Below are positions 744 to 63,881 of a stretch of 64,000 nucleotides of DNA, piece by piece. The stretch is taken from the IMG/VR virus record IMGVR_UViG_3300028393_000019, positions 186,001 through 250,000 of that record, one strand, 5' to 3'. The position numbers were made by a program, and so were the translations under genes. How positions within the stretch are numbered: position 1 is the stretch's first letter; each line of letters begins with the position of its first letter. The notes below the pieces were generated by a model. It was not told the origin of the DNA. It ran no database searches and worked only from the letters and a program-made list of their open reading frames with translations.

Positions 744-1354
744 TTACCTTGTTCCAGTTGTTGCCACTCGTTGTCGTCGATAATTTTAGTATTCCAATTT
801 ACAAAAGCGCCGGGCGTTGTTTCATAGTATACAAAATTCTGCCAACATTTTTGTACAGGCCATGGGCATGTTTGTATATAACCGGCACCCAACGTCCATT
901 TATTATCGCTTGCAATGGCCATTTGATTGACCCAAGTATCCCACCAACGCTTTCCGCCTCGGTTGCGATTTTGCATAGTAATCAAATATAAATCGTAGTT
1001 GTTTACTTTTTCTAATGCATCGATTAACTTACAGGTTACTCTAAACCCATCAGTCATATCCGTAGGCTTCATGCGAAACTCAGGAAATGTATAAAGCCTG
1101 TTAATCATCTTTGCTACGTTTTTTGGGTAACGATCGTCTCTGAATACTCCGCCCATTACCATAGGTTTGCCTGTGCTGGTTTGATAGACTACCCCATACC
1201 CTGTGTGATGCTCTACCACTAAATTTTCCTCAGTATAGTTATGTCGTAACCAGTTGTCTTCCTTTAGGCAAAGCTGTCTAGCTTCTTCAAATTTTGGAAG
1301 AGACTTGTAGTATATAACTATGTGGGTATCTTGTACATCATATCTGTTTTGCAT
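740..1354 (-). CDS. Putative GNAT-fold acyltransferase
   Basis: RLYTFPEFR resembles GNAT motif A (RLYVxPExR); ATGA overlap with the desaturase gene. Confidence 0.4.
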   Translation of the reverse strand: MQNRYDVQDTHIVIYYKSLPKFEEARQLCLKEDNWLRHNYTEENLVVEHHTGYGVVYQTSTGKPMVMGGVFRDDRYPKNVAKMINRLYTFPEFRMKPTDMTDGFRVTCKLIDALEKVNNYDLYLITMQNRNRGGKRWWDTWVNQMAIASDNKWTLGAGYIQTCPWPVQKCWQNFVYYETTPGAFVNWNTKIIDDNEWQQLEQGK

Positions 1355-1360
1355 GAAGTA

Positions 1361-1376
1361 ATATTTACTTAAATAT
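1361..1376. promoter_or_regulatory. Back-to-back late-type promoter motifs (ATATTTA-CT-TAAATAT)
   Basis: TAAATA on both strands in the divergent gap between 1354 and 1394. Confidence 0.65.
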
Positions 1377-1393
1377 GCGTAGGTGGGAAAAAA

Positions 1394-2023
1394 ATGTTAG
1401 ATAACGCAGTAACCAAGTTAAACTTCACAATTAAATTAGATAGTTTAAGAGAATACTATCATATTCTAGCGGCTGAGTATGACCATTTAAAATGGAATTG
1501 GGAACGTCACGGTAATGATATAACTGAAGAATGGCGCAACCGTATGATGTCAGACAAGGGCACATTACTTCCGTATGGATGGGCTATACAGAGTAATTTA
1601 GTTGATATAACTATCCCATGTCCACCATATAACATTAGTACCCATGATCGATGCGACTATAGAAATACTGAATTAGCATTTGGACTTGTGACTAAACTAC
1701 AGGAACTAATGCCGTATACATACCGTTGGAGTTTAGTAGTACAGCCACCTGGCGGTAAGGTGACTAGGCATACTGATCAGGGTGATGAATACACTGCACA
1801 CATTCCAATATACGAGGCACCTGCCGCAGTTTTTAAATTTTGGGATACAGACGAATCTCAACGATTATTTAATATGGATGCCGACGGCACTGTTTATCTA
1901 GTAGATACTATTATTCCTCACGAAACAGAAAACTATGATACTACAGATAGAATAGGACTAGTGTTTAGATTTAAAAGAGATGACTTGCCCAAGTTACTAA
2001 ACATTACTGGCGAAATATCATGA
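1394..2023 (+). CDS. Asp/Asn beta-hydroxylase-like Fe(II)/2OG oxygenase
   Basis: HxD (RHTD) and distal His (PHETEN) followed by R-x-x-L-V strand of a cupin fold. Confidence 0.7.
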   Translation: MLDNAVTKLNFTIKLDSLREYYHILAAEYDHLKWNWERHGNDITEEWRNRMMSDKGTLLPYGWAIQSNLVDITIPCPPYNISTHDRCDYRNTELAFGLVTKLQELMPYTYRWSLVVQPPGGKVTRHTDQGDEYTAHIPIYEAPAAVFKFWDTDESQRLFNMDADGTVYLVDTIIPHETENYDTTDRIGLVFRFKRDDLPKLLNITGEIS

Positions 2024-2661
2024 CTGTAATATATACTCCTATAGATATAGAATTTGATGTACCTAATGAACAAGATGTAATTGACTGGTTTCATGCTAAT
2101 AAAATAACCGACAACGACTATTGGGAATATAAAGAAGGCCGACACGAATGGTGTTATGTAGCATTGCGCGAAGAACCCAAGGATTGGCGATCATATCGTG
2201 CATGGTTAGATTGGGCTGAAGAACGCAAGCCAATTGACAATCCTGGCATATTCTTTTATCCTGGATTTGAAGAAAAGTTTCCAGGGCTGGCAAAGTGCGT
2301 TCGAGAATTGCCGTTCGATCAAATAGGCACTAGCGGATTTATTATGCAAATAGGCACTATCCCTCCACACCAAGATGCTACCTATGATATGACCGAGCCT
2401 CGCCGCTATATTATCTATATAACTGATCCTGCATATAACACATTTCATCTTCTACACAAAGGTAAAAAGATTTGGCCGCAAATAGATCCTAAATATCGAT
2501 GCTTTGCGTTCAACAATACAGACGTTGAACATGCCGCAGACCCTACCAGTAGAACTAAAATATTGTTAAGTACTGTTGGTATAATGAATAAAGAAAAGCA
2601 CGAAGCTTTATTAAAACGCAGTATAGAAAAATTTAAAGACAAGGTGATATATGGAGTTTGA
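2020..2661 (+). CDS. Fe(II)/2OG-type cupin oxygenase
   Basis: IPPHQD ... EHAA motif pair. Confidence 0.65.
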   Translation: MTVIYTPIDIEFDVPNEQDVIDWFHANKITDNDYWEYKEGRHEWCYVALREEPKDWRSYRAWLDWAEERKPIDNPGIFFYPGFEEKFPGLAKCVRELPFDQIGTSGFIMQIGTIPPHQDATYDMTEPRRYIIYITDPAYNTFHLLHKGKKIWPQIDPKYRCFAFNNTDVEHAADPTSRTKILLSTVGIMNKEKHEALLKRSIEKFKDKVIYGV

Positions 2662-3340
2662 ATATTATTATAATCATGTACCCGGTGAAGAGCCTAGCAG
2701 GAATAATTTAATTTATACTAGTCTTATAGATAAAAAGAAAAAGGTGTTTGTACAATGGTACTATAATGATACGGATTATCATCAAGGACAAAATGAAGTT
2801 GTTGATCCTAAACTGATGGAAGAAAAGTTTCATAGAGAATTACATTTTTTGAGCAACATGGCTTGGCGCAATCCACATATGGTTCCAAAGATTATAGAAG
2901 TTAATGTTCCAGAGCGTAAAATATATTTGGCTATCAATGGCGAGGATTTTTGGAATCAAGCAAAATGTAGCGTTGAAAATTATGACAACGTATTGCCTGA
3001 CTGGCAAGAGCAAATGTTAGCAATACTTCAAGCACACAAAGACAGAGGTTGGTATAAATTTAGTTTACATCCTAGCAGTTACTTTATTGTAGACGGTAAA
3101 TTAAAAAGTATAAATTATTTTTTTACATACAGTAGCAATGAAGGCCCTATTAGCATCGCAGATCATGCAAGTCATATATACAGTGCAAGACAAGATATTA
3201 TGCGAAAACAAGTTGACGCGATGGGGTTAGACTGGGATGCTCCACAACCGCTAGATAAATTACAGCAGTTATGTTTTGAAAGTTTTAGAACAAATTATCC
3301 AGATGACTTTATAGCAAAGGCCAAAGCAATATATGATTAA
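2651..3340 (+). CDS. Protein-kinase-like fold protein with degenerate catalytic residues
   Basis: FHRELHFL (alphaC), VPKIIEV, and KFSLHPSSYFIVDGKLKSINYFF aligning with HxDLHPxN...LKxIDF. Confidence 0.5.
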   Translation: MEFEYYYNHVPGEEPSRNNLIYTSLIDKKKKVFVQWYYNDTDYHQGQNEVVDPKLMEEKFHRELHFLSNMAWRNPHMVPKIIEVNVPERKIYLAINGEDFWNQAKCSVENYDNVLPDWQEQMLAILQAHKDRGWYKFSLHPSSYFIVDGKLKSINYFFTYSSNEGPISIADHASHIYSARQDIMRKQVDAMGLDWDAPQPLDKLQQLCFESFRTNYPDDFIAKAKAIYD

Positions 3341-4127
3341 AGGAATTAATGGACAGCCGTATATAGACATGTCTCCATATATTGATATGTGTGCATTTGA
3401 TCGTTTGCAACCTGAAATACTAAGAGGCTTTGCAGATGCACGTGAATATGCTAAAGAAGGCACTTGGATGAAACCTGCTTTTAAAATAGAGGATATGAGT
3501 TACATTCCAAATTGGAAACCTATCTATAAAGCAATTGAAGAATTTTTGGCATTGCCGGATGACAATCCGATTAAACAAGGCGGCATTGACTTGTACAGAG
3601 ATTTCCAAGATTTTACAATACGCAATAGATTTACGCGATATATCAAGATGGCTATGGGCGCATACGATCCTTACATCTATTATTTCCTATGGGAACAAGG
3701 TAGTTGGGACGATCGTGACTCACCGCGCAAACTCACACCCGAAGCTGAATATTTTCCGGGAGTAGTCAAATGGATTGAGGATATGATCGAACATCGTATT
3801 TTTGAAAGCATTGGCAGAGTTATTTTCTTTCACTGCGAAGCCGGTGGTATTCCGTTTGAACATAGAGATCTAGATGGCGAAAAAGGATTACAACAAGGGT
3901 ATACCGATAATGTAAATGAATTCATACACATACGCCCTAACACAAAGAAACCTTTTTACCTGTGGGATCCCGAAACACGTAATCACACATATATTAATAG
4001 TCGTGCCGCATGGTGGAATGACCAAGACTGGCATGGTGGTAATCCTATTATGGAGCAAAGTTACGGTTTACGTATTGACGGAAAATTTACAGAAGAATTT
4101 AAATTAACGATAGCCAGTAAAGGTTAG
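3333..4127 (+). CDS. Fe(II)/2OG-type oxygenase
   Basis: PFEHRD ... DWHGG ... LRIDG. Confidence 0.65.
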   Translation: MIKGINGQPYIDMSPYIDMCAFDRLQPEILRGFADAREYAKEGTWMKPAFKIEDMSYIPNWKPIYKAIEEFLALPDDNPIKQGGIDLYRDFQDFTIRNRFTRYIKMAMGAYDPYIYYFLWEQGSWDDRDSPRKLTPEAEYFPGVVKWIEDMIEHRIFESIGRVIFFHCEAGGIPFEHRDLDGEKGLQQGYTDNVNEFIHIRPNTKKPFYLWDPETRNHTYINSRAAWWNDQDWHGGNPIMEQSYGLRIDGKFTEEFKLTIASKG

Positions 4128-4649
4128 CAAGTATTTGGGAACTAGTCCTATATTAGTTCCAGCATGCCAGCTGTGTATGTGGTTGTACTGATAGATGATT
4201 CCCTGCGGTTCATTATAATAAGCATCCTGTTCGGTAACGAATACATGTCCCGGCGCAGGTTTACTTAAGAAACAAAAAAATCTCACTAGTTCGCCTAACT
4301 GCTTGTGCTCTTCTTCCCATGGATTGATATCCCAATGCCATGGTGTACATTTACCAGGACGTAGCTCACTGACCCAACACATCAAAGGGTTGGCATTAAC
4401 AGACATACTGATGGCAAGTTCATAGTTTTTATGGAAATGCAAACCAGATTGGTAATGTCGATATTCCACTGTATGTTCATTATATCCTGCAGAGGTCAGT
4501 GCGGCGGTTTGACTAATATACTCATTGTAGTAAGGATTAGATTCTTCCAGTGTCATGTGACCGTGACTGGGTTCAACTTTGCGTGTTTTTATTTCAGCGA
4601 TTAGACTTTCACACAAAGCCCCAGTGAGCGTAGCTACATATTTTTTCAT
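4104..4649 (-). CDS. Fe(II)/2OG-type cupin oxygenase, paralog of the 17.2-20.9 kb array
   Basis: PWHWD, PGHVF, SWHAGTNIG shared with the array. Confidence 0.65.
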   Translation of the reverse strand: MKKYVATLTGALCESLIAEIKTRKVEPSHGHMTLEESNPYYNEYISQTAALTSAGYNEHTVEYRHYQSGLHFHKNYELAISMSVNANPLMCWVSELRPGKCTPWHWDINPWEEEHKQLGELVRFFCFLSKPAPGHVFVTEQDAYYNEPQGIIYQYNHIHSWHAGTNIGLVPKYLLTFTGYR

Positions 4650-5311: not shown

Positions 5312-5315
5312 GAAA

Positions 5316-5345
5316 TATTTATGTGCTACTATTATAGTGTAAATA
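5316..5345. promoter_or_regulatory. Divergent late-type promoter pair
   Basis: TAAATA on minus (5316-5321) and plus (5340-5345), each 4 nt before an ATG. Confidence 0.65.
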
Positions 5346-5349
5346 AAAC

Positions 5350-13313: not shown

Positions 13314-13327
13314 GTGTGCAGGGTGGT

Positions 13328-13333
13328 TAAATA
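13328..13333 (+). promoter_or_regulatory. Late-type promoter motif TAAATA
   Basis: 4 nt before ATG 13338; a minus-strand copy lies at 13341-13346. Confidence 0.55.
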
Positions 13334-13337
13334 TACC

Positions 13338-14483
13338 ATGTATTTACAAAAACAAGATATTGCCTACTGCATTATAGACAACACTAATACTTACTCGTCA
13401 AATTGGGTTAAGTCATTAATGATCAACCAGGCCGACTATACTGTCACTAACATAGTGTCAAAAGGCTACAAGGTATTTTGGGAAACAAATGAAGACCGCG
13501 TGTTAAAACAAGTGGCAGATTTGGGATATAAACTTGCCATAGTGTTTAGCACAGGAACTGAATTTATCAATGGTGATGATTTCTTTGATCAAATACAAGT
13601 AAAAGCACTGGCTGACTTTTTCATTGCAGGCCATGTACTAGACAGAGCCGATGCCTATTACGAACTGCATCACCAGTGCTACGCAATCAATTTAAAAATG
13701 TATGCAACATTGGGATATCCTACTATTGGTAAATTTGAGCCCGGTAGACAACATACTGAATTCGAACCGTTGCGTAGTCAAGAAACATTCCATGATGCAC
13801 ACACTCCATTCTGGGTCAAACCTGGTACTAAAGAAAAATTGTATCAGCATTGCTGTCATGGCTGGAACATATTACGAACAGCATTTGAAAACAACTTGCC
13901 TGTAATAGTATTTGATACGCCTATTAGAAATTCTAAGAAACATTTTTATCCAGAAAATTTACAAGAGTTTTACAAACATTTGCCCTGGGCATATAAGCGA
14001 CAAGACTTTTGTCAAAATGAATTTATACACACTGAAAGCACAGATACTGCTTTGCCCAAGTTGACAAATATTTTGCAAGTGTTTACTCCCGCAAGTGGCA
14101 CAGCATGGACAGAAATAATTCATAAGACAGAACCTGTTAGTGTAGTATTTTATGACTACAGCGACAAAGCATTAGAATACTGGAAATCGCATGCTCCGCA
14201 GTTAGATAACGTTACATATTCATTTGCTAAAATAAATCTGTTACACGATGAGCTAGTGCTGTCTAGATATCTCGATACTAGCATCAAAGAAACATTTATT
14301 AATTTGACAAATGTATTTGCATACGAAGGCACTGCTTTTTTTAATAGTTTAGGTTATAGGACCATTCGAGAAAAACAATTAATAGATAATATTAAACAAG
14401 TTTTACCTGATGCTGTTATCTATCAGTCAGTTACAGCTAGTACAGGATTTGACAACACTCCACCGTGGCATACATATGATTGA
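13338..14483 (+). CDS. Hypothetical protein, possibly two domains
   Basis: Long ORF in operon; start moved to ATG 13338; no motif securely recognised. Confidence 0.6.
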   Translation: MYLQKQDIAYCIIDNTNTYSSNWVKSLMINQADYTVTNIVSKGYKVFWETNEDRVLKQVADLGYKLAIVFSTGTEFINGDDFFDQIQVKALADFFIAGHVLDRADAYYELHHQCYAINLKMYATLGYPTIGKFEPGRQHTEFEPLRSQETFHDAHTPFWVKPGTKEKLYQHCCHGWNILRTAFENNLPVIVFDTPIRNSKKHFYPENLQEFYKHLPWAYKRQDFCQNEFIHTESTDTALPKLTNILQVFTPASGTAWTEIIHKTEPVSVVFYDYSDKALEYWKSHAPQLDNVTYSFAKINLLHDELVLSRYLDTSIKETFINLTNVFAYEGTAFFNSLGYRTIREKQLIDNIKQVLPDAVIYQSVTASTGFDNTPPWHTYD

Positions 14484-15216
14484 TCAAGAAACATTAGACT
14501 TTTATAACCGCAACAAAAATCTCATTTGGGAGTTGCCGCCTATTCCATATAATCTTACAACTGATTACGAAATAGCCTATTGGGCTATGCACAATCCTAA
14601 AATAGGATGGATTGAACTAGATTTAAATTTAGACTTACCGGCCTGGAAAGCAGACTGTCGAGTAGCCAATGACTATTTTGTAGATCATCGAGGTCTAGAT
14701 CACCCCGGATGGAATAGCTGTTGCATACACGGGATAGATGTAGATAAAACAGGTAGCTACGATACATACGGTTATACTGATGAATCGCAAGTAAATTATC
14801 ACTGGACAGAACTAGCAGACAAAGTGCCAACTATTGCAAATTTCTGGCGCAACTTTCCAGTAGAGCAATATCGTAGAATACGCTTTATGGAGTTAGAGCC
14901 TAGAGGATATATTGCGCCACACAGTGACAACCCAGGCAACGTTGATGCACTAGAGCACGGCGCACCCTTAAACATAGCAGTTATTCACCCTAGTAATTGT
15001 CACATGGTTTTGGAAGGATTTGGAACTGTTCCTTGGGCAGAAGGGAAAGCGTTTATTGTTAATATTAGAAATCGTCATAGCGTGATAAATTTTAGCAATC
15101 AGCAACGTATACACGTTATAGGGCATGGAAAATACGGTAGTAGGCTAGCTGATTTTTGCAGTCTAGTAGCAAATAATTACAAGAAAAACTTTGATAAATA
15201 CCATGATAGGAGTTGA
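14476..15216 (+). CDS. Asp/Asn beta-hydroxylase-family oxygenase
   Basis: RIRFMELEPRGYIAPHSD ... RHSVIN...RIHVI; start moved to 14476. Confidence 0.75.
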   Translation: MIDQETLDFYNRNKNLIWELPPIPYNLTTDYEIAYWAMHNPKIGWIELDLNLDLPAWKADCRVANDYFVDHRGLDHPGWNSCCIHGIDVDKTGSYDTYGYTDESQVNYHWTELADKVPTIANFWRNFPVEQYRRIRFMELEPRGYIAPHSDNPGNVDALEHGAPLNIAVIHPSNCHMVLEGFGTVPWAEGKAFIVNIRNRHSVINFSNQQRIHVIGHGKYGSRLADFCSLVANNYKKNFDKYHDRS

Positions 15217-18988: not shown

Positions 18989-18990
18989 AA

Positions 18991-23278: not shown

Positions 23279-23286
23279 TATTTATA
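23279..23286 (-). promoter_or_regulatory. T4-type late promoter TATAAATA
   Basis: Exact consensus on minus strand upstream of the fibre-like gene. Confidence 0.65.
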
Positions 23287-27980: not shown

Positions 27981-27998
27981 TATTTAACAAGGTAAATA
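27981..27998. promoter_or_regulatory. Divergent late-type promoter pair
   Basis: TAAATA on minus (27981-27986, 4 nt to ATG) and plus (27993-27998, 7 nt to ATG). Confidence 0.65.
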
Positions 27999-32013: not shown

Positions 32014-32960
32014 TTTGGTATCTTGCTGTCCGCACTACTAACACATCTAGTAGTCACGCATTTTTGTGGCACAGAAAACAAAGTAAATTTTTCTATCGTG
32101 CCCAGTGCGGCTTCGTGGCAACTGTAAGCACGTTTGACTTCCGTACCTTTTATTATAACACTCTGATAACCTGCATTACAAGTCCAATTGGCAAATTGAT
32201 TAAACCCCAGTGCATTAAACCGTTCTGCTTGATCTATAAAATAATTTTTATCACCATCCATTAAACGGATTTGATAACCTTCCTGCTGTTCAAAATCGTT
32301 TTGCATTATATCAACCATCTCAGCTGTGTAGCCTTCCACTATGGCGGTGGCACTGTCATTGCTTTGTGGTTTAAGTGTTACATTAATTCCACGAGCTCGA
32401 AATCGTTCACAGCGTTCTAGTGTTTCAAAGAACAGTTCTGGCACCATAACTTGATTAACAGTTACATGAACCCGCTCGTTCATTAACTGTAAACACTTGT
32501 CACCGAACTCGTGCTCCTTGGCGAACTCTGCATGAAAGCTGGCTGTAATACTGCGGCGCTGTAGACAATCAGTGATGCTACACCAGTTTTTCCACCAGCT
32601 GGGTCCCGGACTCAAATTGGTAGTCATATGTATACTTTGGTAGGGACTTTCTAATTCATCTATATGTTTGATCAATTCGGGCAACTGTTTGTACGCAGTA
32701 GGTTCACCTCCTGAGAAGCTCCAGTGAAATTGGGTGAATCCGTTCAAACGAGCTTGACGTTTTATCTCGTCGACTGTAGTCTTATAGACTTCTAAACTTT
32801 GGTAATCCAAATTGTCGCTTCGGGCATAGGGCCAACAATAGCTACATTTGTAATTACAAAATCTACCTAGGATCCAACTTATGTTAAATAATGGGCGATC
32901 CAACATTGTTTGTTGCCCAAAATGCGTTATGTCTTTGAAAGGAATGATTGCGAAGTTCAT
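32004..32960 (-). CDS. Radical SAM protein with C-terminal twitch-like domain
   Basis: CNYKCSYC, FSGGEP, WTCNAGYQS...C...CVTTRC. Confidence 0.9.
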   Translation of the reverse strand: MNFAIIPFKDITHFGQQTMLDRPLFNISWILGRFCNYKCSYCWPYARSDNLDYQSLEVYKTTVDEIKRQARLNGFTQFHWSFSGGEPTAYKQLPELIKHIDELESPYQSIHMTTNLSPGPSWWKNWCSITDCLQRRSITASFHAEFAKEHEFGDKCLQLMNERVHVTVNQVMVPELFFETLERCERFRARGINVTLKPQSNDSATAIVEGYTAEMVDIMQNDFEQQEGYQIRLMDGDKNYFIDQAERFNALGFNQFANWTCNAGYQSVIIKGTEVKRAYSCHEAALGTIEKFTLFSVPQKCVTTRCVSSADSKIPKCR

Positions 32961-32966
32961 TGACAG

Positions 32967-32972
32967 TATTTA
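32967..32972 (-). promoter_or_regulatory. Late-type promoter motif TAAATA
   Basis: 6 nt before ATG 32960. Confidence 0.55.
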
Positions 32973-32994
32973 CAAATGATAGTATAATATACAT

Positions 32995-33090
32995 GTAGAC
33001 GTGAGTGGAACTTGGTATACCTCCAGCTTGCTGGGACTGGGCCTGGCCCTTAGGGTGGCTTTGTAGGTTCGAATCCTACCGTCTACACCA
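32995..33090 (+). tRNA. Class II tRNA-like gene with Leu-type body and irregular anticodon arm (anticodon undetermined, possibly GCT)
   Basis: 7-bp acceptor GTAGACG/CGTCTAC, A73 and encoded CCA, T-arm GTAGG-TTCGAAT-CCTAC, D-loop GGAACTTGGTA, long variable arm. Confidence 0.8.
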
Positions 33091-34014: not shown

Positions 34015-34199
34015 GATTAAATAGAATTATGACACATTGGACTATAACAGTTGAAGAAGCAGATGACGGTAGCGGAGATCTAGTTCTCCCACTGCCGCAG
34101 GAGATGTTGGATTTGCAAGGATGGAAAGAAGGAGACACATTGGAATGGAACGATCTAGGTGACGGCTCGTGGACCATTTCAAAGGCAACAAATGGCTAA
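34011..34199 (+). CDS. AbrB/MazE-like DNA-binding protein
   Basis: DLVLPLPQEM...GWKEGDTLEW swapped-hairpin pattern. Confidence 0.6.
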   Translation: MRLNRIMTHWTITVEEADDGSGDLVLPLPQEMLDLQGWKEGDTLEWNDLGDGSWTISKATNG

Positions 34200-42938: not shown

Positions 42939-42940
42939 AA

Positions 42941-43562: not shown

Positions 43563-43570
43563 TATAAATA
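43563..43570 (+). promoter_or_regulatory. T4-type late promoter TATAAATA
   Basis: Exact consensus, followed by AGGAG SD and ATG 43591. Confidence 0.65.
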
Positions 43571-45936: not shown

Positions 45937-46769
45937 GATCACACTATTGGACATGTTCGAAATTTGCAGACTGGTTACGTGGCACACCAAAACCAGGAGC
46001 CCAAACCAGTGAAGGCTGGGATGAGTGGACTGAAAAAGCCAAGTCAGCACATCCTGTTCGTTGGTGGATTGCCGAAGAAGGATTAGATCACCTTCAAAAA
46101 TTTGTTTATTATATTCCGGATCGACTAAATGACATACGCTATTATATTAACAATCGCTGGGTTAGTTACAGCCATGCTCTTACCGCACATCCTCGAGACA
46201 TACAACCGGGTAACTGGAGTGATGTTGGCAATCGCTTTCTTCCTTGTATGTTCAATGAGCTTGTGGACTTTGTTGAAATAGAACAAGCATGGCATCACTG
46301 CATGTGGAGTGATGAAGCCAAAACCAAATTTGATGTGCCTTGGTGGCGCAGTGGCTGGCTACGTTTGCGTACATGGCGCAATGCCGAAGCAGGTATGGAA
46401 TATCTCAAATGGGCTAGCGAGCTTGTCGTTGGTGAAGACATGGGTGCTACTCCTGGGGACAAAGGATTCGGCGAGCCCACCTATCAAGCCAAATCCGCTA
46501 AAGAAATCATCGAGCTTTACACTTGGTGGACTGTTACATATCGCAATCGTCCTGACCCATACGAAGCAAGTGGCTGGACTGCGGCATGCGAAGCCAGTCG
46601 TTTGGCCAACGGTGGCCGACTGAGTTTCAGCGGTGAGAAAGATCCTACACTTAAAAAAGCCAGCGACAAGGCTCACAAGCTACTTCAAAAGATTGAAAAG
46701 GCTTATGAAGCAGAAGACGAAGCTATGATGATTCGCCTTATCAAAATCCGTCAGAGTCTATGGACATAA
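45933..46769 (+). CDS. Trp-rich hypothetical protein
   Basis: 278-aa ORF with SD AAGGA. Confidence 0.6.
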   Translation: MRSHYWTCSKFADWLRGTPKPGAQTSEGWDEWTEKAKSAHPVRWWIAEEGLDHLQKFVYYIPDRLNDIRYYINNRWVSYSHALTAHPRDIQPGNWSDVGNRFLPCMFNELVDFVEIEQAWHHCMWSDEAKTKFDVPWWRSGWLRLRTWRNAEAGMEYLKWASELVVGEDMGATPGDKGFGEPTYQAKSAKEIIELYTWWTVTYRNRPDPYEASGWTAACEASRLANGGRLSFSGEKDPTLKKASDKAHKLLQKIEKAYEAEDEAMMIRLIKIRQSLWT

Positions 46770-48121
46770 ACAAGTTTAGAGATGAACTTAATAGTGTCAG
46801 TCCATCATTTTGTGCCGCTAAGTGGAAGCAGGTAACGCTTCATCTCCAAACTGGGCATAACCATAGTTGCCATCATCCGGCACCTCACAAGATACCGTTA
46901 GAAGAACTGTCAGCCAATCCATCAGCGTTACACAATACCAAGTTTAAAAAACTACAACGTAAGATGATGCTGAGTGGCGAACGTCCGGCAGAGTGTGACT
47001 ACTGCTGGCGTGTTGAAGACAACAGTAACTCACTAAGTGATAGAATTTTTAAAAGTGCCGACAAGTGGGCGGCACCTCATATTCAAGACATAGCCAGTAA
47101 ACCCTGGGACCATGATGTTGTACCCAGCTACGTAGAAGTTAGCTTTGGTAATGTGTGTAATTTTAAATGCAGTTATTGTGCGCCCAATGTCAGCTCACGT
47201 TGGATGGAAGAAATTGAAAAGTTTGGACCATATCCCACATCGGGCAAGTTCAACAACCTGGAGTGGCTGAAACAAACAGATCAGATGCCCATACCACACA
47301 AGGACGACAATCCCTATGTTGATGCATTTTGGGAATGGTGGCCTACTGCTTATCGTGAGCTAGAGCATTTTCGTATCACTGGCGGTGAACCTTTACTGAA
47401 CAAAAATACATTTAAGATTCTAGATTACATAATTGCTAATCCCAATCCAAACTTGGACTTTAGTATTAATGCCAACATGTGTCCACCGAGTGACATACTA
47501 GATAAGTTTATTGAAAAGATTAAACTGTTGGAAGGCAAAGTAAAAAGATTCAAAATCTTTACTAGTGCAGAGGCATATGGCGCTCAGGCAGAGTATATAC
47601 GCAATGGTATGGACTATGCTCAATGGATCGATAATATTGAACGTGTGCTAAAAGAAGTACCAAGTGTAGGGTTTACAATCATGAGCACCTACAATGCCCT
47701 AAGCGTTCCCAGCTATACCAAATTCTTGCAAGATGTATTGAGACTCAAAACACAATATTACAAACCAGAATATAAGCAAACTGCTGTACTATTAGACATA
47801 CCGTATCTGCGGTGGCCTCCACATCAGTCAATCTTTATTCTAACAAAGGACTTTGCCACAACAATCAAAGAGCATGTGGACTTTGTGCAGTCTTATGCAG
47901 AAGGCACTGCAACAGAAACATACCAAGGATTTGATCGTCTTGAAGTCGAACGTATGAAACGAATATACGAAATATTTCAATCACACGATGAACCAGATAC
48001 TGTAAAGAATCAAAAAGACTTTGTAGCGTTTGTTGACGAGCATGATCGCAGACGTGGCACAAACTTCTCGGCTACATTTCCCGAGATGGTAAAATTTTAC
48101 AATTACTGTCAACAGCTATGA
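46760..48121 (+). CDS. Radical SAM protein with N-terminal twitch-like domain
   Basis: FCAAKW...SCHH...CDYCW, then CNFKCSYC and TGGEP. Confidence 0.9.
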   Translation: MDINKFRDELNSVSPSFCAAKWKQVTLHLQTGHNHSCHHPAPHKIPLEELSANPSALHNTKFKKLQRKMMLSGERPAECDYCWRVEDNSNSLSDRIFKSADKWAAPHIQDIASKPWDHDVVPSYVEVSFGNVCNFKCSYCAPNVSSRWMEEIEKFGPYPTSGKFNNLEWLKQTDQMPIPHKDDNPYVDAFWEWWPTAYRELEHFRITGGEPLLNKNTFKILDYIIANPNPNLDFSINANMCPPSDILDKFIEKIKLLEGKVKRFKIFTSAEAYGAQAEYIRNGMDYAQWIDNIERVLKEVPSVGFTIMSTYNALSVPSYTKFLQDVLRLKTQYYKPEYKQTAVLLDIPYLRWPPHQSIFILTKDFATTIKEHVDFVQSYAEGTATETYQGFDRLEVERMKRIYEIFQSHDEPDTVKNQKDFVAFVDEHDRRRGTNFSATFPEMVKFYNYCQQL

Positions 48122-49527
48122 AATATCAATTGCATTTTTTCTACGACTACGTATTTCCTAACTACATCTTGCCAAATGCATTGATGCCAGAATACGCTAT
48201 CTTAAATTACTTTAACAGTCAATATTCAAACAAAGACAGAGAAAATTGTTTTACAGATCCAGGTGCCAGTGATGTAACACGATCTGTCTTTAATAAAAAA
48301 TTCGGTGATTGGCCAAACAGTATTAGACACAACGGCTCGCATCTTGATAGGGGAGTATACTCTAATAAGGTACAAATAATTGAAAACTCTTTGTACCTTG
48401 GCAAGCATCAGGTCAATCGATATATCTACCCTATAAAACTAGGGCCGCATCTGCATGAATTTGTAGGAGTTAATTTAAGGCCAGGCAACAAACTAAATGG
48501 CGAATACTTTTGGAAACACATGAGTGAAGAAGCCTTACAAGATGCACAATCAAGAAGAGCTATCATATTCATAGATTATGGACAAGAGAACTTTATAGAA
48601 AAAGAAACTTATATAAATTTACATGAAGTTCTTAGATACAGCGGAATACCTAAGGAACAAGTTATCCTAGCGTTTAACACGTTCAATGGTCGAGAAGTAT
48701 ACGAATCATGGTTTAGACCCGACGAACGTAGACTAGAAGTACACAACTGGTGCTATGTAATGAGCGAAGCATCTATGTTTTACTTTGAGAACCCTAGCTT
48801 CCGTCTGAGCGTTGAGCAATTTAGAAACAGCAGATATTTTAAAAGACCAAATCATTTCTTATTTAAAATTAGAAACTCTCGAAATCATAGACTGGCTCTG
48901 CTGTATAAGATGGCCACAGATGGATTATTAAGTCAGGGAGATTGGTCTTGCTTGACTAAACTACAAGTTAATGATCGTATGCTAGATTATTATAGGAATC
49001 TTTATCAGTTTGACATAAACACTGACACAGTAAAAGAGCTATGCAATTCAACGCCGCATGTCCTACAAAGTGAAAGAGACAATCGTCATGAGCTAGTAAG
49101 CGCATGGACTGACAAAGATGCCAAGCCACATGCTGACAGTTATTTCTATATCTGCACAGAAACTTTTGTACACGGAGAGCACAAGTCACTTACTGAAAAA
49201 GTGTTTAAGCCAATTGCAAATTTCCAACCGTTTTTATTTGTAGCATATCCAGGCGCATTAGCTTTGTTAAGAAGTTTGGGATTCAAAACCTTTAGTCCGT
49301 TTATAGACGAAAGCTACGATATTGAATCTGACGAAGGTCGTCGTGTACATATGATCTATAAAGAAATTGCCAGACTATGTGCTATGACTCAAGACCAACT
49401 GCATGATTGGTATTGGCAGATGGAGTCTATATTAGAACACAATCATAATCTGTTGTTGACACTACACAAGAACGATCCTAGCAGTATTGAATTAATAAAA
49501 TATCTGCACCAACGAACCAACGAATAA
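48118..49527 (+). CDS. Putative glycosyltransferase (GT10/GT-B-like C-terminal motif)
   Basis: TET...LTEKVFKPIANFQPF...GFKTFSPFIDESYD. Confidence 0.5.
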   Translation: MKYQLHFFYDYVFPNYILPNALMPEYAILNYFNSQYSNKDRENCFTDPGASDVTRSVFNKKFGDWPNSIRHNGSHLDRGVYSNKVQIIENSLYLGKHQVNRYIYPIKLGPHLHEFVGVNLRPGNKLNGEYFWKHMSEEALQDAQSRRAIIFIDYGQENFIEKETYINLHEVLRYSGIPKEQVILAFNTFNGREVYESWFRPDERRLEVHNWCYVMSEASMFYFENPSFRLSVEQFRNSRYFKRPNHFLFKIRNSRNHRLALLYKMATDGLLSQGDWSCLTKLQVNDRMLDYYRNLYQFDINTDTVKELCNSTPHVLQSERDNRHELVSAWTDKDAKPHADSYFYICTETFVHGEHKSLTEKVFKPIANFQPFLFVAYPGALALLRSLGFKTFSPFIDESYDIESDEGRRVHMIYKEIARLCAMTQDQLHDWYWQMESILEHNHNLLLTLHKNDPSSIELIKYLHQRTNE

Positions 49528-49530
49528 ATA
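49525..49530 (+). promoter_or_regulatory. Late-type promoter motif TAAATA
   Basis: 5 nt before ATG 49536; includes the upstream TAA stop. Confidence 0.55.
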
Positions 49531-49535
49531 TTTCC

Positions 49536-50081
49536 ATGAATTACAAAGACAGTAACTGGCAAACAGTAGACACAGCATATCTAAATACCTTTGGTAAAGA
49601 AGTCCCTGTGTACTCGCCTGCTGTTTATAGAGAGTACAGGGGAGAGATATTTACTACCTATCATTCTACTGCGCACCCTGTTAACCAAATATTACCAAAC
49701 GATGTGCAAGTTCATACTAGATTTTCAAAATCATATCAAGGTGTACTGCGTGGACTACACTATGATGACAAAACTTGGAAGCTGGTTCAAGCTCTAGTCG
49801 GCGATATCTATCTAGTAGTGCTTGATGTAAGACAAGACAGCGATACATTTGGCAAATGGGAATCTTACATCATAAGTGAAAAGACCAGAGACCAAGTACT
49901 GGTACCCCCGGGATTTGCTAACGGGCACTATGCACTGACAGATTGCATTTTTCACTACAGCCTATTTTATCAAGGCGACTATGTTAATGAAAATAATCAG
50001 GGTGTAATAAAATGGAATGACCCGGCTTACAATATAGAATGGCCTACTAAAGATCCTATAATACAAGGGCGTGACAAATGA
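49536..50081 (+). CDS. rmlC: NDP-4-keto-6-deoxyhexose 3,5-epimerase (RmlC family)
   Basis: GVLRGLHY, KLVQALVG.IY.V.LDVR.DS.TFGKW, VPPGFANGH. Confidence 0.9.
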   Translation: MNYKDSNWQTVDTAYLNTFGKEVPVYSPAVYREYRGEIFTTYHSTAHPVNQILPNDVQVHTRFSKSYQGVLRGLHYDDKTWKLVQALVGDIYLVVLDVRQDSDTFGKWESYIISEKTRDQVLVPPGFANGHYALTDCIFHYSLFYQGDYVNENNQGVIKWNDPAYNIEWPTKDPIIQGRDK

Positions 50082-55926: not shown

Positions 55927-55951
55927 CATAGCATCAATTTGGTGCTATAAT
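55923..55951 (+). promoter_or_regulatory. Consensus sigma70 promoter with extended -10
   Basis: TTGACA-17 nt-TATAAT, with TGn before the -10 box. Confidence 0.85.
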
Positions 55952-55983
55952 ATAAGTATTGTTTAACTAGTTAGGAGCATGAA

Positions 55984-59423: not shown

Positions 59424-59443
59424 AAAAAGTCCTCTTTATATGA

Positions 59444-59474
59444 TATTTAGTGTAATTTGGGCTTAAGATAAATA
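59444..59474. promoter_or_regulatory. Divergent late-type promoter pair between the two fibre genes
   Basis: TAAATA on minus (59444-59449) and plus (59469-59474). Confidence 0.6.
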
Positions 59475-59492
59475 CTTGAAAGAGAACCCTAT

Positions 59493-60944: not shown

Positions 60945-60946
60945 AG

Positions 60947-60974
60947 TTGACCTTTACAGTTAAATCTGTATAAT
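60947..60974 (+). promoter_or_regulatory. Sigma70 promoter of queD
   Basis: TTGACC-16 nt-TATAAT. Confidence 0.65.
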
Positions 60975-60980
60975 TACTAT

Positions 60981-61053
60981 ATGCGGACTTAGGCATTCAT
61001 CCCGCAATATAAACTCTGCATGCCATTGCTTAATCAAGGAGATTACAATGGCA
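60981..61053 (+). ncRNA. Candidate riboswitch-like 5' leader (H-type pseudoknot plus start-codon-sequestering hairpin)
   Basis: P1 TGCGG/CCGCA, P2 GGCAT/ATGCC, A-rich linker; competing hairpin TGCCATTG/CAATGGCA plus TAATC/GATTA. Confidence 0.5.
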
Positions 61054-61533
61054 AAATTTTACTCAACAAAAACTTACGGAAACGACCGCGGCTTATCATG
61101 CTGTTTTAGACAATGGCGTGCCACACACAGCCACTGCTCGACACTACATGGTTACTCAATCGGCATCAAGCTAATCTTTGAATGCGATACACTAGATGAC
61201 AAAAACTGGTGTATGGACTTTGGTGGGCTTAAAGAATTTAAAGCGTGGGCAGACTATATGTTTGATCACACGTTAGTAATCGCAGAAGATGATCCTCACT
61301 TAGAAACATTCCAAAAACTAAATGCAATTAAGGGCGGTTTTGAAGACAGCGGAATATGTGATCTACGCATTGTGCCCGGAGTAGGCTGTGAAATGTTTGC
61401 TAAAATAGCCTACGATAAAATGGCTGAACTTTTGGCAAGTGGTGATATGCGTTATCCAATTAATCCAACAGTAAGAATCAAATCGGTCGAGGTGTTCGAA
61501 CATGGCGCAAATTCGGCTACCTACGAAGGTTGA
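61048..61533 (+). CDS. queD: 6-carboxytetrahydropterin synthase / PTPS family
   Basis: SCCFRQWRATHSHCSTLHGY, MDFGGLK, FDHT, VEVFEH. Confidence 0.85.
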   Translation: MAKFYSTKTYGNDRGLSCCFRQWRATHSHCSTLHGYSIGIKLIFECDTLDDKNWCMDFGGLKEFKAWADYMFDHTLVIAEDDPHLETFQKLNAIKGGFEDSGICDLRIVPGVGCEMFAKIAYDKMAELLASGDMRYPINPTVRIKSVEVFEHGANSATYEG

Positions 61534-61747
61534 TTTTTATATTGAGTGGCTCGCTACTGTATCATTTTTATGTTCAGTGGCGTTGACCTCTCTTAACTAC
61601 TATCCAACTTATCTATATATCAGTCTATTAACCAATGTACTTTGGTTAATAGTAGGTATTATCTGGCGCAAATGGTCGCTCATAACAGTTGAATTTGTCG
61701 TCTGTTTCATGTATACTATAGGTATTATAAACTACTGGCTACACTAA
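61502..61747 (+). CDS. Small multi-pass membrane protein
   Basis: Three hydrophobic segments; true start probably slightly downstream. Confidence 0.5.
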   Translation: MAQIRLPTKVDFYIEWLATVSFLCSVALTSLNYYPTYLYISLLTNVLWLIVGIIWRKWSLITVEFVVCFMYTIGIINYWLH

Positions 61748-62772
61748 TGAAACGTCTCGGCTTTGCCTGCAAGTGGATCGATCGTCCAGATCAAGTGGAC
61801 GGTATCAGTCCAAAAGACGATGCAAAAAAATACAACACTGGTTCGACTACAGTTTCTTGGTTAAATAGACAATCGAGAGATCAAGCGGAACAAAAGTTAT
61901 GGGACCTAATGGTAGGCAATATCGAGGCAACTCGAAAGTTGGTAGAACGTGTCAGCACACTTGACCCTCATCTTAGGATGGTTAGGATTAGCAGTGACAT
62001 TCTCCCTGTTTATACTCACGCTGACTTTGCTGATTATTGGCGTAAACCTGACGTGGTTTCATACGCCGAAACCGCGTTTAAAAGAGTGGGCGATCTTGCT
62101 CGCAATAGCAATGTTCGGTTGTCTATGCATCCTGGGCAGTTTACTGTCCTGGCAAGCGATAACCCAGGCATTGTCGAACGCTCAATCGCAGAGTTCGAAT
62201 ATCACACAGACATGGCCCGCTGGATGGGCTATGGAAAGTCGTTTCAAGACTTTAAAATCAATGTACACATATCAGGTAAACAAGGTCCCGAAGGTATCAG
62301 ACGAGCCTACGGAAAACTAACACCCGAAGCTCGAAACTGTATTACAATCGAAAACGAAGAAAACTCATGGGGGCTAGATGATTGTCTCACTATTAGCGAT
62401 ATTATACCTATTGTTCTTGACGTTCATCATTTTTGGATTCGAGAAGGAAGTTACTTAGATCCTAGCGATATCCGAGTTACACGGGTTGTTGACAGCTGGC
62501 GCGGCCTTCGTCCTACTATGCATTACTCCATATCAAGAGAAGACTATCTTGTTGGACACGATCCAATGGTTCCACCAGACCATAAACAGCTTCTTTTAGA
62601 CGGTTACAAAAAGCAAAAGCTCAGAGCCCACTCTGACTTTTATTGGAATACAAAAGTTAGTGAATGGGCCTTGAGCTTTTTAGAAACACACGATATTATG
62701 TGCGAATCTAAGGGTAAGAACTTGGCTAGCTTTGCTCTATACGAGCAAGCTAAACTACTTAAACTGCTTTAG
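61747..62772 (+). CDS. uvsE: UV-damage endonuclease (UvsE/UvdE)
   Basis: RLGFAC, RISSDILP, RLSMHPGQFTVLAS, IENEE, VLDVHH, AHSD, MCESKGK. Confidence 0.93.
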   Translation: MKRLGFACKWIDRPDQVDGISPKDDAKKYNTGSTTVSWLNRQSRDQAEQKLWDLMVGNIEATRKLVERVSTLDPHLRMVRISSDILPVYTHADFADYWRKPDVVSYAETAFKRVGDLARNSNVRLSMHPGQFTVLASDNPGIVERSIAEFEYHTDMARWMGYGKSFQDFKINVHISGKQGPEGIRRAYGKLTPEARNCITIENEENSWGLDDCLTISDIIPIVLDVHHFWIREGSYLDPSDIRVTRVVDSWRGLRPTMHYSISREDYLVGHDPMVPPDHKQLLLDGYKKQKLRAHSDFYWNTKVSEWALSFLETHDIMCESKGKNLASFALYEQAKLLKLL

Positions 62773-62974
62773 GCTTACGTGGAGCACGTGGCTTTTTAAC
62801 AGCTGGTGCTTTCTTAGCCGCTGGCTTTTTCTTAGCTGGTGCCATAGATTCTACAACTGCTTGTGTAGCTTGTTCAGCAACTGCTGTAGGTGCAGGAGTT
62901 TCCACTTTATAAGGAACTTCTGCTTCTACTGCTTTAGGCTTAATACCAAATAGTTTTTTAATGTGATGTAACAT
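62759..62974 (-). CDS. Small protein with histone-H1-like Lys/Ala/Pro tail
   Basis: AKKKPAAKKAPAVKKPRAPRKPKAV; start 62974 after SD AGGAG. Confidence 0.65.
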   Translation of the reverse strand: MLHHIKKLFGIKPKAVEAEVPYKVETPAPTAVAEQATQAVVESMAPAKKKPAAKKAPAVKKPRAPRKPKAV

Positions 62975-62994
62975 AGTTAAATCTCCTAGTCCAA

Positions 62995-63009
62995 TATTTA
63001 TAATAAATA
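62995..63009. promoter_or_regulatory. Back-to-back late promoter pair
   Basis: TATAAATA on minus (62995-63002) and TAAATA on plus (63004-63009, 5 nt to ATG). Confidence 0.65.
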
Positions 63010-63014
63010 TCATT

Positions 63015-63575
63015 ATGTATAACTTTATTAGGTACGTTAGTTTAAATGAGGGCTACTCTCCCAAAACATTGGAGCAATCTCCCTTGCCATACGCCAAGGA
63101 TGATTTAGAGCCAGTCAAAAGTGAAGATACTATAAACTATCATTATGGAACACTGTACAAAGGATATGTAGATCGCTACAACAAAGGTGAAGGAGATCCC
63201 GACTTCAACGAAGCAGGTGCTTTTTTACATGACATTTATTTCAAACAGTTTCATAAACCCACAGGTAACAATCATCCCGATCACATAGCTTTGAATTTTA
63301 TCAACAAACACTTTAAGACTTTTGAAAATTTCCGAGACAAAGTGCAAAAGTCAGCTATGGGTATACAGGGGTCTGGTTGGGTATACCTGGCTCGTGATGG
63401 GTCAATCAAAACTATCAAGAATCATGAGATTCGAATGGATATCATACTGCTGATTGACTGGTGGGAACATGCTTGGGCTTTGGATTATCAAGCTGACAAA
63501 AAAGCCTACTTGCGAAACATCTACAAAATAATCAACTGGAATGTGATTGGCTCTAGAGTTGGTCGAGTGTCTTAA
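63015..63575 (+). CDS. Fe/Mn superoxide dismutase
   Basis: LPYAKDDLEP, HY, LHD, GSGWVYL, DWWEHAW. Confidence 0.92.
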   Translation: MYNFIRYVSLNEGYSPKTLEQSPLPYAKDDLEPVKSEDTINYHYGTLYKGYVDRYNKGEGDPDFNEAGAFLHDIYFKQFHKPTGNNHPDHIALNFINKHFKTFENFRDKVQKSAMGIQGSGWVYLARDGSIKTIKNHEIRMDIILLIDWWEHAWALDYQADKKAYLRNIYKIINWNVIGSRVGRVS

Positions 63576-63840
63576 GACTGCTGGCCGGCATTGACCATAC
63601 TTTTCTAGCTTCCACGCCCTTGAGCTGGGCAAACTTTTTAGCGTCACAATCACCACACACATGGTATACATTGTTGCTTAGTCGCTTGGGATCCATTGAT
63701 CCCCTATCTCGTGTAAACACTTCCTGACAACAGTCGCATCTGAACACAAGTACTTGCTTTTCTCGCACATAGGTGTGAGTAAATCCCCGATTACTGGTTC
63801 TTACATAGTGGTTTTGTCGCTGTTCTGTTCTGATATACAT
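63553..63840 (-). CDS. Zinc-ribbon hypothetical protein
   Basis: CDCC...CGDC; start moved to ATG 63840, 5 nt after TAAATA. Confidence 0.6.
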   Translation of the reverse strand: MYIRTEQRQNHYVRTSNRGFTHTYVREKQVLVFRCDCCQEVFTRDRGSMDPKRLSNNVYHVCGDCDAKKFAQLKGVEARKVWSMPASSLKTLDQL

Positions 63841-63845
63841 TAATG

Positions 63846-63881
63846 TATTTACATTAAGGTTATAAAATTCTATGCTAAATA
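63846..63881. promoter_or_regulatory. Divergent late-type promoter pair
   Basis: TAAATA on minus (63846-63851) and plus (63876-63881). Confidence 0.55.

What the first reader, a model, noticed from the sequence alone, without database searches (positions are those of the whole stretch)
1354..63881. TAAATA late-promoter motif at nearly every divergent junction, often 4-7 nt before ATG (leaderless late mRNAs)
Seen: TAAATA sits 4-7 nt before the start codon of ten genes (ATG at 1354, 5311, 5350, 13338, 27976, 28006, 32960, 49536, 63015, 63840), mostly without a clear SD. A second class has about 17-20 nt of spacer, usually with an SD (23259, 43591, 59423, 59493, 62974, 63899). Copies are often back-to-back on both strands. 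Known: the T4 gp55 late promoter is TATAAATA with +1 a few nt downstream. Inference: the first class gives leaderless transcripts and mainly heads enzyme operons, while structural genes use leadered mRNAs. This also implies the biosynthetic island is a late-phase programme.
Basis: partly seen in the sequence, partly recalled or inferred. Interest (0 to 1): 0.7.

Follow-up and report, generated by a model that had tools for sequence, protein, structure and literature searches.

The report
Late promoters abutting start codons
A lake jumbo phage puts a T4-style late-promoter box (TAAATA) before about 55 genes. In half of them the box sits only 4-7 bases from the ATG, so those late mRNAs should have almost no leader, a layout absent from T4 and from its cultured relatives.

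Summary
The window is part of a 265.7-kb, about 72%-complete IMG/VR record of a freshwater jumbo phage.

- **Spacing.** TAAATA is depleted overall. Genome-wide it ends 3-7 nt before 29 called starts (0.5 expected; at most 8 in 2000 shuffles), 16-27 nt before 26 starts, and never 8-15 nt.
- **Conservation.** The hexamer is invariant while its flanks vary. Upstream of the terminase gene, about 44 distinct relatives show terminator hairpin, 3 nt, TAAATA, 4-5 nt, ATG. Orthologues in a 345-kb relative keep their spacing class.
- **Sigma factor.** The clade encodes a gp55-family late sigma factor next to gp47/gp46 homologues. That block lies beyond the end of this record.
- **Early genes.** They use perfect TTGACA-N17-TATAAT promoters with Shine-Dalgarno (SD) leaders.

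TAAATA is therefore most likely the T4-type late promoter already proposed for relatives such as CBB (ATAAATA). The new part is the short-spacing class. T4, CBB and PA5oct have the box only 13-45 nt upstream.

Leaderless transcription is inferred from geometry and conservation. The metatranscriptome contigs were too sparse to map 5' ends.

The parts
1362..1367 (-). TAAATA box, short class; 7 nt to ATG 1354 (204-aa ORF 740-1354)
1370..1375 (+). TAAATA box, long class; 18 nt with SD AGGTGG to ATG 1394 (hydroxylase-like). Back-to-back with the box at 1362-1367
5316..5321 (-). TAAATA box, short class; 4 nt to ATG 5311
5340..5345 (+). TAAATA box, short class; 4 nt to ATG 5350. The whole divergent gap is 38 nt
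13328..13333 (+). TAAATA box, short class; 4 nt to ATG 13338
13341..13346 (-). TAAATA box 27 nt before ATG 13313 of the minus-strand operon, with no clear SD. Uncertain member
15195..15200 (+). TAAATA box, long class; 18 nt with SD AGGAG to ATG 15219.
23279..23284 (-). TAAATA box, long class; 19 nt to ATG 23259. No SD seen, and my caller did not call this ORF
27981..27986 (-). TAAATA box, short class; 4 nt to ATG 27976 (class-III aminotransferase)
27993..27998 (+). TAAATA box, short class; 7 nt to ATG 28006 (B12-binding radical SAM). The divergent gap is 29 nt. The box is kept at 4-7 nt in relatives 63-77% identical, except one at 28 nt
32967..32972 (-). TAAATA box, short class; 6 nt to ATG 32960 (radical SAM). 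It lies inside the spacer of the opposite sigma70-type promoter
32960..32988 (+). Perfect TTGACA-N17-TATAAT promoter facing the tRNA-like gene at 32995-33090. This is the contrasting early/host-type promoter class
34018..34023 (+). TAAATA box, short class; 5 nt to ATG 34029 (56-aa ORF with a homologue in G001).
43565..43570 (+). TAAATA box, long class; 20 nt with SD AGGAG to ATG 43591
49525..49530 (+). TAAATA box, short class; 5 nt to ATG 49536 (dTDP-4-dehydrorhamnose epimerase-like). Its TAA is the stop codon of the upstream gene
59444..59449 (-). TAAATA box, long class; 20 nt with an SD to ATG 59423 (747-aa virion structural protein)
59469..59474 (+). TAAATA box, long class; 18 nt to ATG 59493 (tail-fibre-like protein). 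The class is kept in G001 (spacer 21)
62995..63000 (-). TAAATA box, long class; 20 nt with SD AGGAG to ATG 62974
63004..63009 (+). TAAATA box, short class; 5 nt to ATG 63015 (Fe/Mn superoxide dismutase). The same class and spacer are found in G001
63846..63851 (-). TAAATA box, short class; 5 nt to ATG 63840 (95-aa ORF). The G001 orthologue is 72% identical and has the box at 4 nt
63876..63881 (+). TAAATA box, long class; 17 nt with SD AAGGGA to ATG 63899. The G001 orthologue has the same spacing

Best explanation
TAAATA, usually aTAAATA, is the core of this phage's late promoter. It is a -10-type box without a -35 partner, read by host RNA polymerase carrying a phage sigma factor of the T4 gp55 family. 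It comes in two layouts.

- **Long layout** (16-27 nt to the ATG). Transcription starts about 5-6 nt after the box. This gives a 10-20-nt leader that usually holds a Shine-Dalgarno (SD) sequence, as in T4.
- **Short layout** (4-7 nt, mostly 4-5). The predicted start falls on the A of the ATG or 1-3 nt before it. These mRNAs are then leaderless or nearly so, and would be started by ribosomes binding the 5'-terminal AUG.

Back-to-back boxes in gaps of 29-40 nt fire divergent late operons, including those of the biosynthetic island.

Shown: the positional enrichment, the conservation, the presence of the sigma family in the clade, and the contrast with early promoters. Inferred: the timing, the exact start sites and the mode of translation.
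For: - **Positional statistics.** 29, 26 and 0 starts at 3-7, 16-27 and 8-15 nt, far from every shuffle. Two relatives, G001 and G002, show the same bimodal spacing.
- **Footprints.** Among 50 distinct terminase upstream sequences, about 44 read hairpin with compensatory changes, T-run, 3 variable nt, invariant TAAATA, 4-5 variable nt, ATG. Three have a different upstream gene. The B12-radical-SAM gene keeps the box at 4-7 nt, and keeps the back-to-back pair, in relatives 63-77% identical; one relative has it at 28 nt.
- **Class stability.** Orthologues in G000 and G001 agree as short/short 6 times and long/long 9 times, with no swaps.
- **Extended consensus.** A is favoured just before the box (55-76%), no -35 signal is seen, and G is disfavoured just after the box. 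This matches T4's TATAAATA at -13 to -6 except for the first T.
- **Sigma factor.** G001 (94% complete, terminase 84% identical) has a 277-aa protein matching phrog_12791 at 2.6e-71 and phrog_234 at 1e-24. It sits next to SbcD/SbcC homologues, as genes 55-47-46 do in T4. At least 593 IMG/VR stretches encode it. It aligns with T4 gp55 over the N-terminal motif and the sigma-2-like core.
- **Genes served.** These include the tail tube, terminase, head-tail adaptor, tail-fibre-like proteins and virion proteins.
- **Early contrast.** There are 44 TTGACA-N17-TATAAT hits against about 8 in shuffles, clustered before small genes with SD leaders.
- **Start-site hints.** 19 of 20 sites with spacer 4-5 have a pyrimidine before the ATG, against 49% of other genes (p = 3e-5). 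The fifth base after the box is A in 42-64% of sites in both classes. No short-class gene has a downstream in-frame start with an SD.
- **Published relative.** CBB has ATAAATA at 35 sites before structural genes, plus a gp55-like sigma factor (PMC5259590).
Against: - No 5' end was mapped. Three lake metatranscriptome runs hold the phage only as sparse, low-depth contigs.
- The record itself has no gp55-like gene. Its presence is inferred from synteny in three relatives.
- gp33 and the gp45 clamp were not found by sequence in G000 or G001. Only a gp44-type clamp loader was found.
- The pyrimidine preference before the ATG is not significant in G001.
- 18 of 29 short-class genes follow a gene on the same strand, so read-through transcripts could also carry them.
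- Gene starts come from a home-made caller.
Confidence: 0.62

Rival explanations
1. TAAATA is a late promoter in both layouts, but short-class genes are mainly expressed from longer transcripts that start further upstream: in the preceding gene, or inside the divergent neighbour. The box next to the ATG would then be a minor internal promoter, and translation would rely on coupling or A/U-rich entry rather than on a 5'-terminal AUG.
For: 18 of 29 short-class genes have a same-strand gene directly upstream, and in 5 of them the TAA of the box is that gene's stop codon. Many genes in the island lack an SD and overlap their neighbours. That pattern fits translational coupling.
Against: 11 short-class sites are at divergent junctions with gaps of 29-40 nt. 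At the terminase gene and at G000 135428 a strong terminator ends 3-6 nt before the box. Coupling alone does not explain an invariant hexamer held at 4-7 nt while the spacer sequence drifts.
Confidence: 0.2
2. In the short layout the hexamer is a translation signal, not a promoter. It would be an A/U-rich ribosome-entry or enhancer element placed where an SD would be.
For: It occupies the position of an SD, and these genes have none.
Against: The same hexamer, with the same flanking preferences, sits 16-27 nt upstream of genes that have their own SD, and never at 8-15 nt. It is the motif that relatives use at leadered distance only. An exact 6-mer requirement is unlike known A/U-rich enhancers (own knowledge).
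Confidence: 0.06
3. The box is read by the host's primary sigma factor as a weak -10 element, or by an unrecognised phage RNA polymerase, not by a gp55-type factor.
For: No gp55 gene is present in the record itself. The record is only about 72% complete.
Against: Early promoters are near-perfect TTGACA-N17-TATAAT. TAAATA lacks the last T of TATAAT and has no -35 or TG extension. No T7-type or multisubunit polymerase domain was found in the record. The gp55 family is present throughout the clade.
Confidence: 0.07

Closest known systems
Bacteriophage T4 late promoters (TATAAATA at -13 to -6) read by gp55, with gp33 and the gp45 clamp
   Same: An A/T-rich -10-type box with no -35 element, used on both strands before virion genes. 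A gp55-family sigma factor sits next to gp47/gp46 homologues in the clade. Long-layout spacing is like T4.
   Different: The first T of the box is not conserved; G is favoured there. The sigma factor is 277 aa against 185 aa in T4, with an insertion of about 120 aa. gp33 and gp45 were not detectable by sequence. T4 has no box 3-7 nt from a start: TATAAATA lies 13-34 nt upstream, mode 28, and TAAATA-N3-7-ATG is not above its control.
ATAAATA late motif of Pectobacterium phage CBB and Cronobacter phage GAP32, with gp55-like CBB_244 (PMC5259590)
   Same: The same heptamer, before structural genes, and the same sigma family, phrog_12791.
   Different: In CBB the box lies 23-45 nt from starts and there is no short class. 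The terminase is only 44% identical.
Pseudomonas phage PA5oct, the nearest cultured relative (terminase 52% identical)
   Same: It encodes a gp55-like protein 47% identical to G001's, and a bS21 homologue. TAAATA is enriched 16-35 nt from starts.
   Different: It has no short class, and its terminase gene has no nearby box. The paper reports only sigma70-like promoters (PMC7318152).
Leaderless mRNAs: lambda cI from PRM, and many genes of Actinobacteria and Deinococcus (own knowledge; PMC4633059 appeared in the listing but was not read)
   Same: A -10 element a few bases before the start codon, so that the transcript begins with AUG and has no SD.
   Different: Here the layout is tied to a phage late sigma factor. 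It covers about half of the predicted late promoters of a phage whose early genes use strong SDs.
Poxvirus late promoters (TAAATG initiator overlapping the ATG). Analogy from own knowledge, not tested
   Same: A TAAAT-type late element fused to the start codon, giving late mRNAs with essentially no templated leader.
   Different: An unrelated polymerase and unrelated factors. The ATG overlaps the element itself, and the mRNAs carry 5' poly(A) heads.

Membership tests
T4-type (gp55-dependent) late promoter | Conserved A/T-rich box TATAAATA at the -10 position | tested here: met
   TAAATA is invariant at about 55 sites in G000 and 62 in G001. A precedes it in 55-76% of sites. The first T of the T4 octamer is not kept. 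T4 relatives such as Aeh1 also vary at -13/-12 (PMC2988020).
T4-type (gp55-dependent) late promoter | No -35 element | tested here: met
   There is no positional signal from -29 to -14 in either class or either genome. Divergent gaps of 29-40 nt hold two boxes and leave no room for a -35.
T4-type (gp55-dependent) late promoter | The phage encodes a gp55-family sigma factor | tested here: inconclusive
   It is absent from the record. It is present in G001, G002, PA5oct, CBB and at least 593 IMG/VR stretches. In three relatives it lies about 16-17 kb beyond the homologue of the record's first gene, inside the block the record lacks.
T4-type (gp55-dependent) late promoter | Co-activator gp33 and sliding clamp gp45 | tested here: not met
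   PF02916 finds nothing in G000 or G001. phmmer and tblastn with T4 gp45 and gp33 give no credible hit. A gp44-type clamp loader is present in G001 (phrog_168, 4e-78), so a divergent clamp probably exists. CBB's authors also found neither protein.
T4-type (gp55-dependent) late promoter | Transcription starts about 6 nt after the box, late in infection, coupled to replication | not testable with these tools
   The RNA runs hold only sparse contigs. There is no culture and no time course.
Leaderless mRNA | The primary 5' end is at the A of the AUG, or within a few nt of it | not testable with these tools
   Only geometry is available. Spacer 5 puts +1 on the A in T4 numbering, and spacer 4 is one base off. 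The pyrimidine before the ATG adds support.
Leaderless mRNA | No SD and no alternative downstream start | tested here: met
   Spacers of 4-7 nt hold no SD. No short-class gene has a downstream in-frame start with an SD within 30 codons. Orthologue alignments begin at residue 1.
Sigma70-type promoter (considered for the box) | -35 TTGACA, 17-nt spacer, -10 TATAAT ending in T | tested here: not met
   The box has A at the last position and no -35. Genuine sigma70-consensus promoters exist elsewhere in the genome and form a separate class.

The most novel reading that the evidence does not exclude
A whole clade of freshwater jumbo phages has rebuilt about half of its gp55-type late promoters so that late mRNAs begin at the AUG. 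That would give the phage a second, SD-independent translation channel late in infection. Such a channel could keep working while SD-led host and early-phage messages are shut off, or after ribosomes are remodelled. The phage also carries its own ribosomal protein bS21.
Probability: 0.15. Interest if true: 0.8.

Novelty: new variant of a known kind. Interest (0 to 1): 0.6.

Why it matters
T4-type late transcription is a textbook system, and its promoters are always described with leadered, SD-bearing mRNAs. In this clade the same minimal promoter is fused to the start codon at dozens of genes, including the terminase and the tail tube.

If 5' ends confirm it, this would be the first bulk use of leaderless mRNAs by a gp55-type late programme that I could find in the searchable literature. 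It would also be a natural system for asking how ribosomes of an SD-using host handle leaderless messages late in infection.

Practically, the two-layout rule fixes start codons, and it predicts late expression for the accessory biosynthetic island in uncultured phages.

Tried and rejected
- **Near relatives among cultured phages.** Megablast of the window against cultured phages found nothing.
- **5' ends from RNA runs.** They returned only short contigs at depth 2-14, none covering the terminase or tail-tube promoters and no pile-up of ends. One X17 contig begins exactly at 63899, but at this depth that means nothing.
- **Sigma or polymerase in the record.** Sigma70 region 2, RNA polymerase beta, T7-type polymerase, CBB_244, phrog_234 and phrog_12791 all gave no hit. 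The missing block explains this.
- **Same-strain contig joining the record's end to the sigma gene.** Nothing was found. There is no blastn overlap with 80 gp55 loci. There is an 80% match over only 69 bases in one 165-kb contig, and no exact match to the end sequence. Only relatives 70-83% identical appeared.
- **bS21 as the cause of the short class.** PA5oct has bS21 but no short class, so no simple link holds.
- **Terminator-promoter modules as a general rule.** Only 2 of 29 short-class sites have one.
- **C-terminal clamp-binding motif of gp55 in the homologues.** The alignment is unclear.
- **Not done.** The whole genome of phage Phosso was not fetched; only its terminase upstream region was read, and it has no box.


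Full report
**What the DNA is.** The window is bases 186001-250000 of a 265,680-bp linear IMG/VR virus record, rated about 72% complete, with 42% G+C. DNA and RNA runs that hold it come from lake and freshwater samples. It encodes a tail sheath, tail tube, terminase and many virion proteins. The nearest cultured phages by terminase are Pseudomonas PA5oct (52% identity), Sinorhizobium Phosso (51%) and the CBB/Rak2-like group (44%). IMG/VR holds hundreds of closer relatives with terminase 77-100% identical.

**The observation.**
I add a short-class site at 34029 and long-class sites at 1394 and 15219.
- The raw count is not enriched: the window has 56 copies against 85 expected. The signal is positional.
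- I used a gene caller that ignores the motif. Genome-wide, the box ends 3-7 nt before 29 starts (13 at exactly 4 nt), 16-27 nt before 26 starts, and never 8-15 nt.
- Shuffled upstream regions give means of 1.95, 4.5 and 3.0 for those three ranges, and never reach the observed values.
- TAAATA is the top hexamer in both ranges, ahead of the Shine-Dalgarno hexamers.
- 67 of 186 copies are intergenic, against 10% intergenic DNA.
- All nine divergent junctions in the window carry the box, six or seven of them on both sides.

**Conservation.**
- Upstream of the terminase gene I collected 50 distinct sequences from relatives. About 44 show one module: a hairpin whose stem changes by compensatory substitutions, a T-run, three variable bases, invariant TAAATA, four or five variable bases ending in T, then ATG. 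Three have another gene upstream instead.
- The B12-binding radical SAM gene of the window keeps the box at 4-7 nt in relatives only 63-77% identical. Those relatives often keep the opposite-strand box back-to-back. One relative has the box at 28 nt.
- In G001, a 345-kb, 94%-complete relative, the same two-peak spacing recurs: 17 short and about 45 long. It recurs again in G002.
- Orthologous genes never change class: 6 short/short, 9 long/long, 0 swaps.
- The junction at 63840/63899 is conserved in G001 with spacers 4 and 17.

**What reads the box.**
- In T4 numbering the octamer TATAAATA spans -13 to -6 (PMC2988020). Here the last six bases are fixed, A is favoured at -12, G rather than T is favoured at -13, and there is no -35 signal.
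- The record has no sigma70 region 2, no multisubunit or T7-type polymerase, and no gp55-like gene.
- G001 has a 277-aa protein that matches the "sigma factor for late transcription" family of CBB (phrog_12791, 2.6e-71) and the T4 gp55 family (phrog_234, 1e-24). It is followed by SbcD- and SbcC-like genes, which is the 55-47-46 order of T4.
- Gene-order comparison shows that the two ends of our record flank a block of about 105 kb in G001. That block holds this sigma factor, the major capsid protein, the portal and the DNA polymerase.
- Two further contigs link a homologue of the record's first gene to the sigma gene. So the factor is very probably encoded by this phage, but I could not show it directly.
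- gp33 and the gp45 clamp were not found by sequence. A gp44-type clamp loader was.

**Contrast with early genes.**
- A cluster of small minus-strand genes at 100-120 kb, and stretches at 120-156 and 172-183 kb, carry near-perfect TTGACA-N17-TATAAT promoters with leaders of about 25-35 nt and strong AGGAG sites. There are 44 hits against about 8 in shuffles.
- The host therefore uses ordinary promoters and ordinary Shine-Dalgarno initiation, and the box marks a separate class.
- The box precedes the tail tube, terminase, head-tail adaptor, tail-fibre-like proteins and virion proteins. That fits late expression.
- The low-GC biosynthetic island (window 1-32 kb) includes an aminotransferase, a B12-binding radical SAM enzyme, a second radical SAM enzyme and a hydroxylase-like protein. 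It has only TAAATA boxes and two one-mismatch sigma70-like hits. Late expression of the island is a fair inference, not a measurement.

**The short layout.**
- With T4 geometry, a 5-nt spacer puts +1 exactly on the A of ATG. A 4-nt spacer is one base off, within normal start-site play. Spacers of 6-7 nt predict leaders of 1-3 nt; four of six 7-nt spacers read NNNNACT-ATG, with A as the fifth base.
- The base before the ATG is a pyrimidine in 19 of 20 sites with spacer 4-5, against 49% elsewhere (p = 3e-5). In G001 the figure is 11 of 16, which is not significant.
- The fifth base after the box is A in 42-64% of sites in both classes.
- At the terminase gene and at G000 135428 a terminator ends just before the box, so upstream transcripts should stop there.
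- Eleven short-class sites are at divergent junctions too short for any other promoter.
- No short-class gene has a later start with an SD.
- These points make leaderless or near-leaderless late mRNAs the best reading, but no 5' end was observed.

**Comparison with known systems.**
- The motif itself is not new. CBB's authors reported ATAAATA at 35 sites before structural genes and a gp55-like factor, and the same was predicted for GAP32 (PMC5259590).
- The short layout is new. Running the same pipeline on other phages gives CBB boxes only at 23-45 nt, PA5oct mainly at 16-35 nt, and T4 TATAAATA at 13-34 nt, with no peak at 4-7 nt. The T4 pattern count equals its control.
- PA5oct's terminase gene has no nearby box.
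- Full-text searches for leaderless late genes in T4-like or jumbo phages found nothing relevant. The phiKZ dRNA-seq study, which covered the early infection phase, reported no leaderless phage transcript.

Inside the window the short class does head enzymes and the long class heads virion proteins. Genome-wide the short class also heads the tail tube, the terminase and two virion proteins. The split is at most a tendency.

**Verdict.** This is a real, strongly non-random and conserved regulatory motif. It is best explained as a T4-type late promoter, a known kind, used in an unreported leaderless layout at about half of its sites. Confidence is about 0.8 for "late promoter of the gp55 type" and about 0.6-0.65 for "short class gives leaderless mRNAs".

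Noticed in passing
G000:C1:153166-153321 (+), outside the window; L270: A phage-encoded ribosomal protein bS21 homologue (PF01165, 70 bits, above cut-off). It is also present in G001 and PA5oct, but not above cut-off in CBB or T4. It lies among sigma70-type promoters, so it is probably made before the late genes.
   Followed up: partly
window 32995-33090 (+): ARAGORN calls a 96-nt 'tRNA-Pro(ggg)' with its anticodon at position 39. Rfam's tRNA model scores 28.4 bits, just under the gathering score of 29, with a long insertion in the variable region. A perfect sigma70-type promoter ends about 7 nt before its 5' end.
   Followed up: partly
window 1-32000: A low-GC (36-39%) accessory biosynthetic island: class-III aminotransferase, B12-binding radical SAM, a second radical SAM, an Asp/Arg-hydroxylase-like protein and many unknowns. 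It is mostly absent from G001, but the radical SAM gene occurs on other IMG/VR contigs.
   Followed up: partly
window 63015-63575 (+): An Fe/Mn superoxide dismutase gene (Sod_Fe_C, 9e-22), headed by a short-class box and conserved in G001.
   Followed up: partly
G000:C1 ends; G001:C1:88000-194000: The record is a linear fragment. The block between its two ends, seen in G001, holds the major capsid protein, portal, DNA polymerase, gp46/47 homologues, late sigma factor, clamp loader, PhoH, dCMP deaminase and endolysin.
   Followed up: yes
G000:C1:8307-28235, 81638-93881, 250226-263476: Giant ORFs of 2925, 3701, 2305, 1439 and 4416 aa. The 1439-aa one matches a virion structural family.
   Followed up: no
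G000:C1:32553-34169 (+): A tryptophan-halogenase-like gene (phrog_2928, 8e-150), headed by a long-class box.
   Followed up: no
G000:C1:100000-120000 (-), 172000-183000 (+); window 32960, 39703, 41412, 44305, 55923: Near-perfect TTGACA-N17-TATAAT promoters, often followed by ATATACACTT. There are 44 against about 8 in shuffles, marking the presumed early and middle genes.
   Followed up: partly
whole genome: TAAATA, with 186 copies, is among the rarest of the fifteen A4T2 hexamers (range 185-377), and the window has 56 copies against 85 expected. This suggests selection against stray copies inside genes.
   Followed up: no
window 46760-48121, 49536-50081: Further sugar and radical SAM genes outside the island: a radical-SAM-domain protein and a dTDP-4-dehydrorhamnose 3,5-epimerase-like protein.
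   Followed up: no
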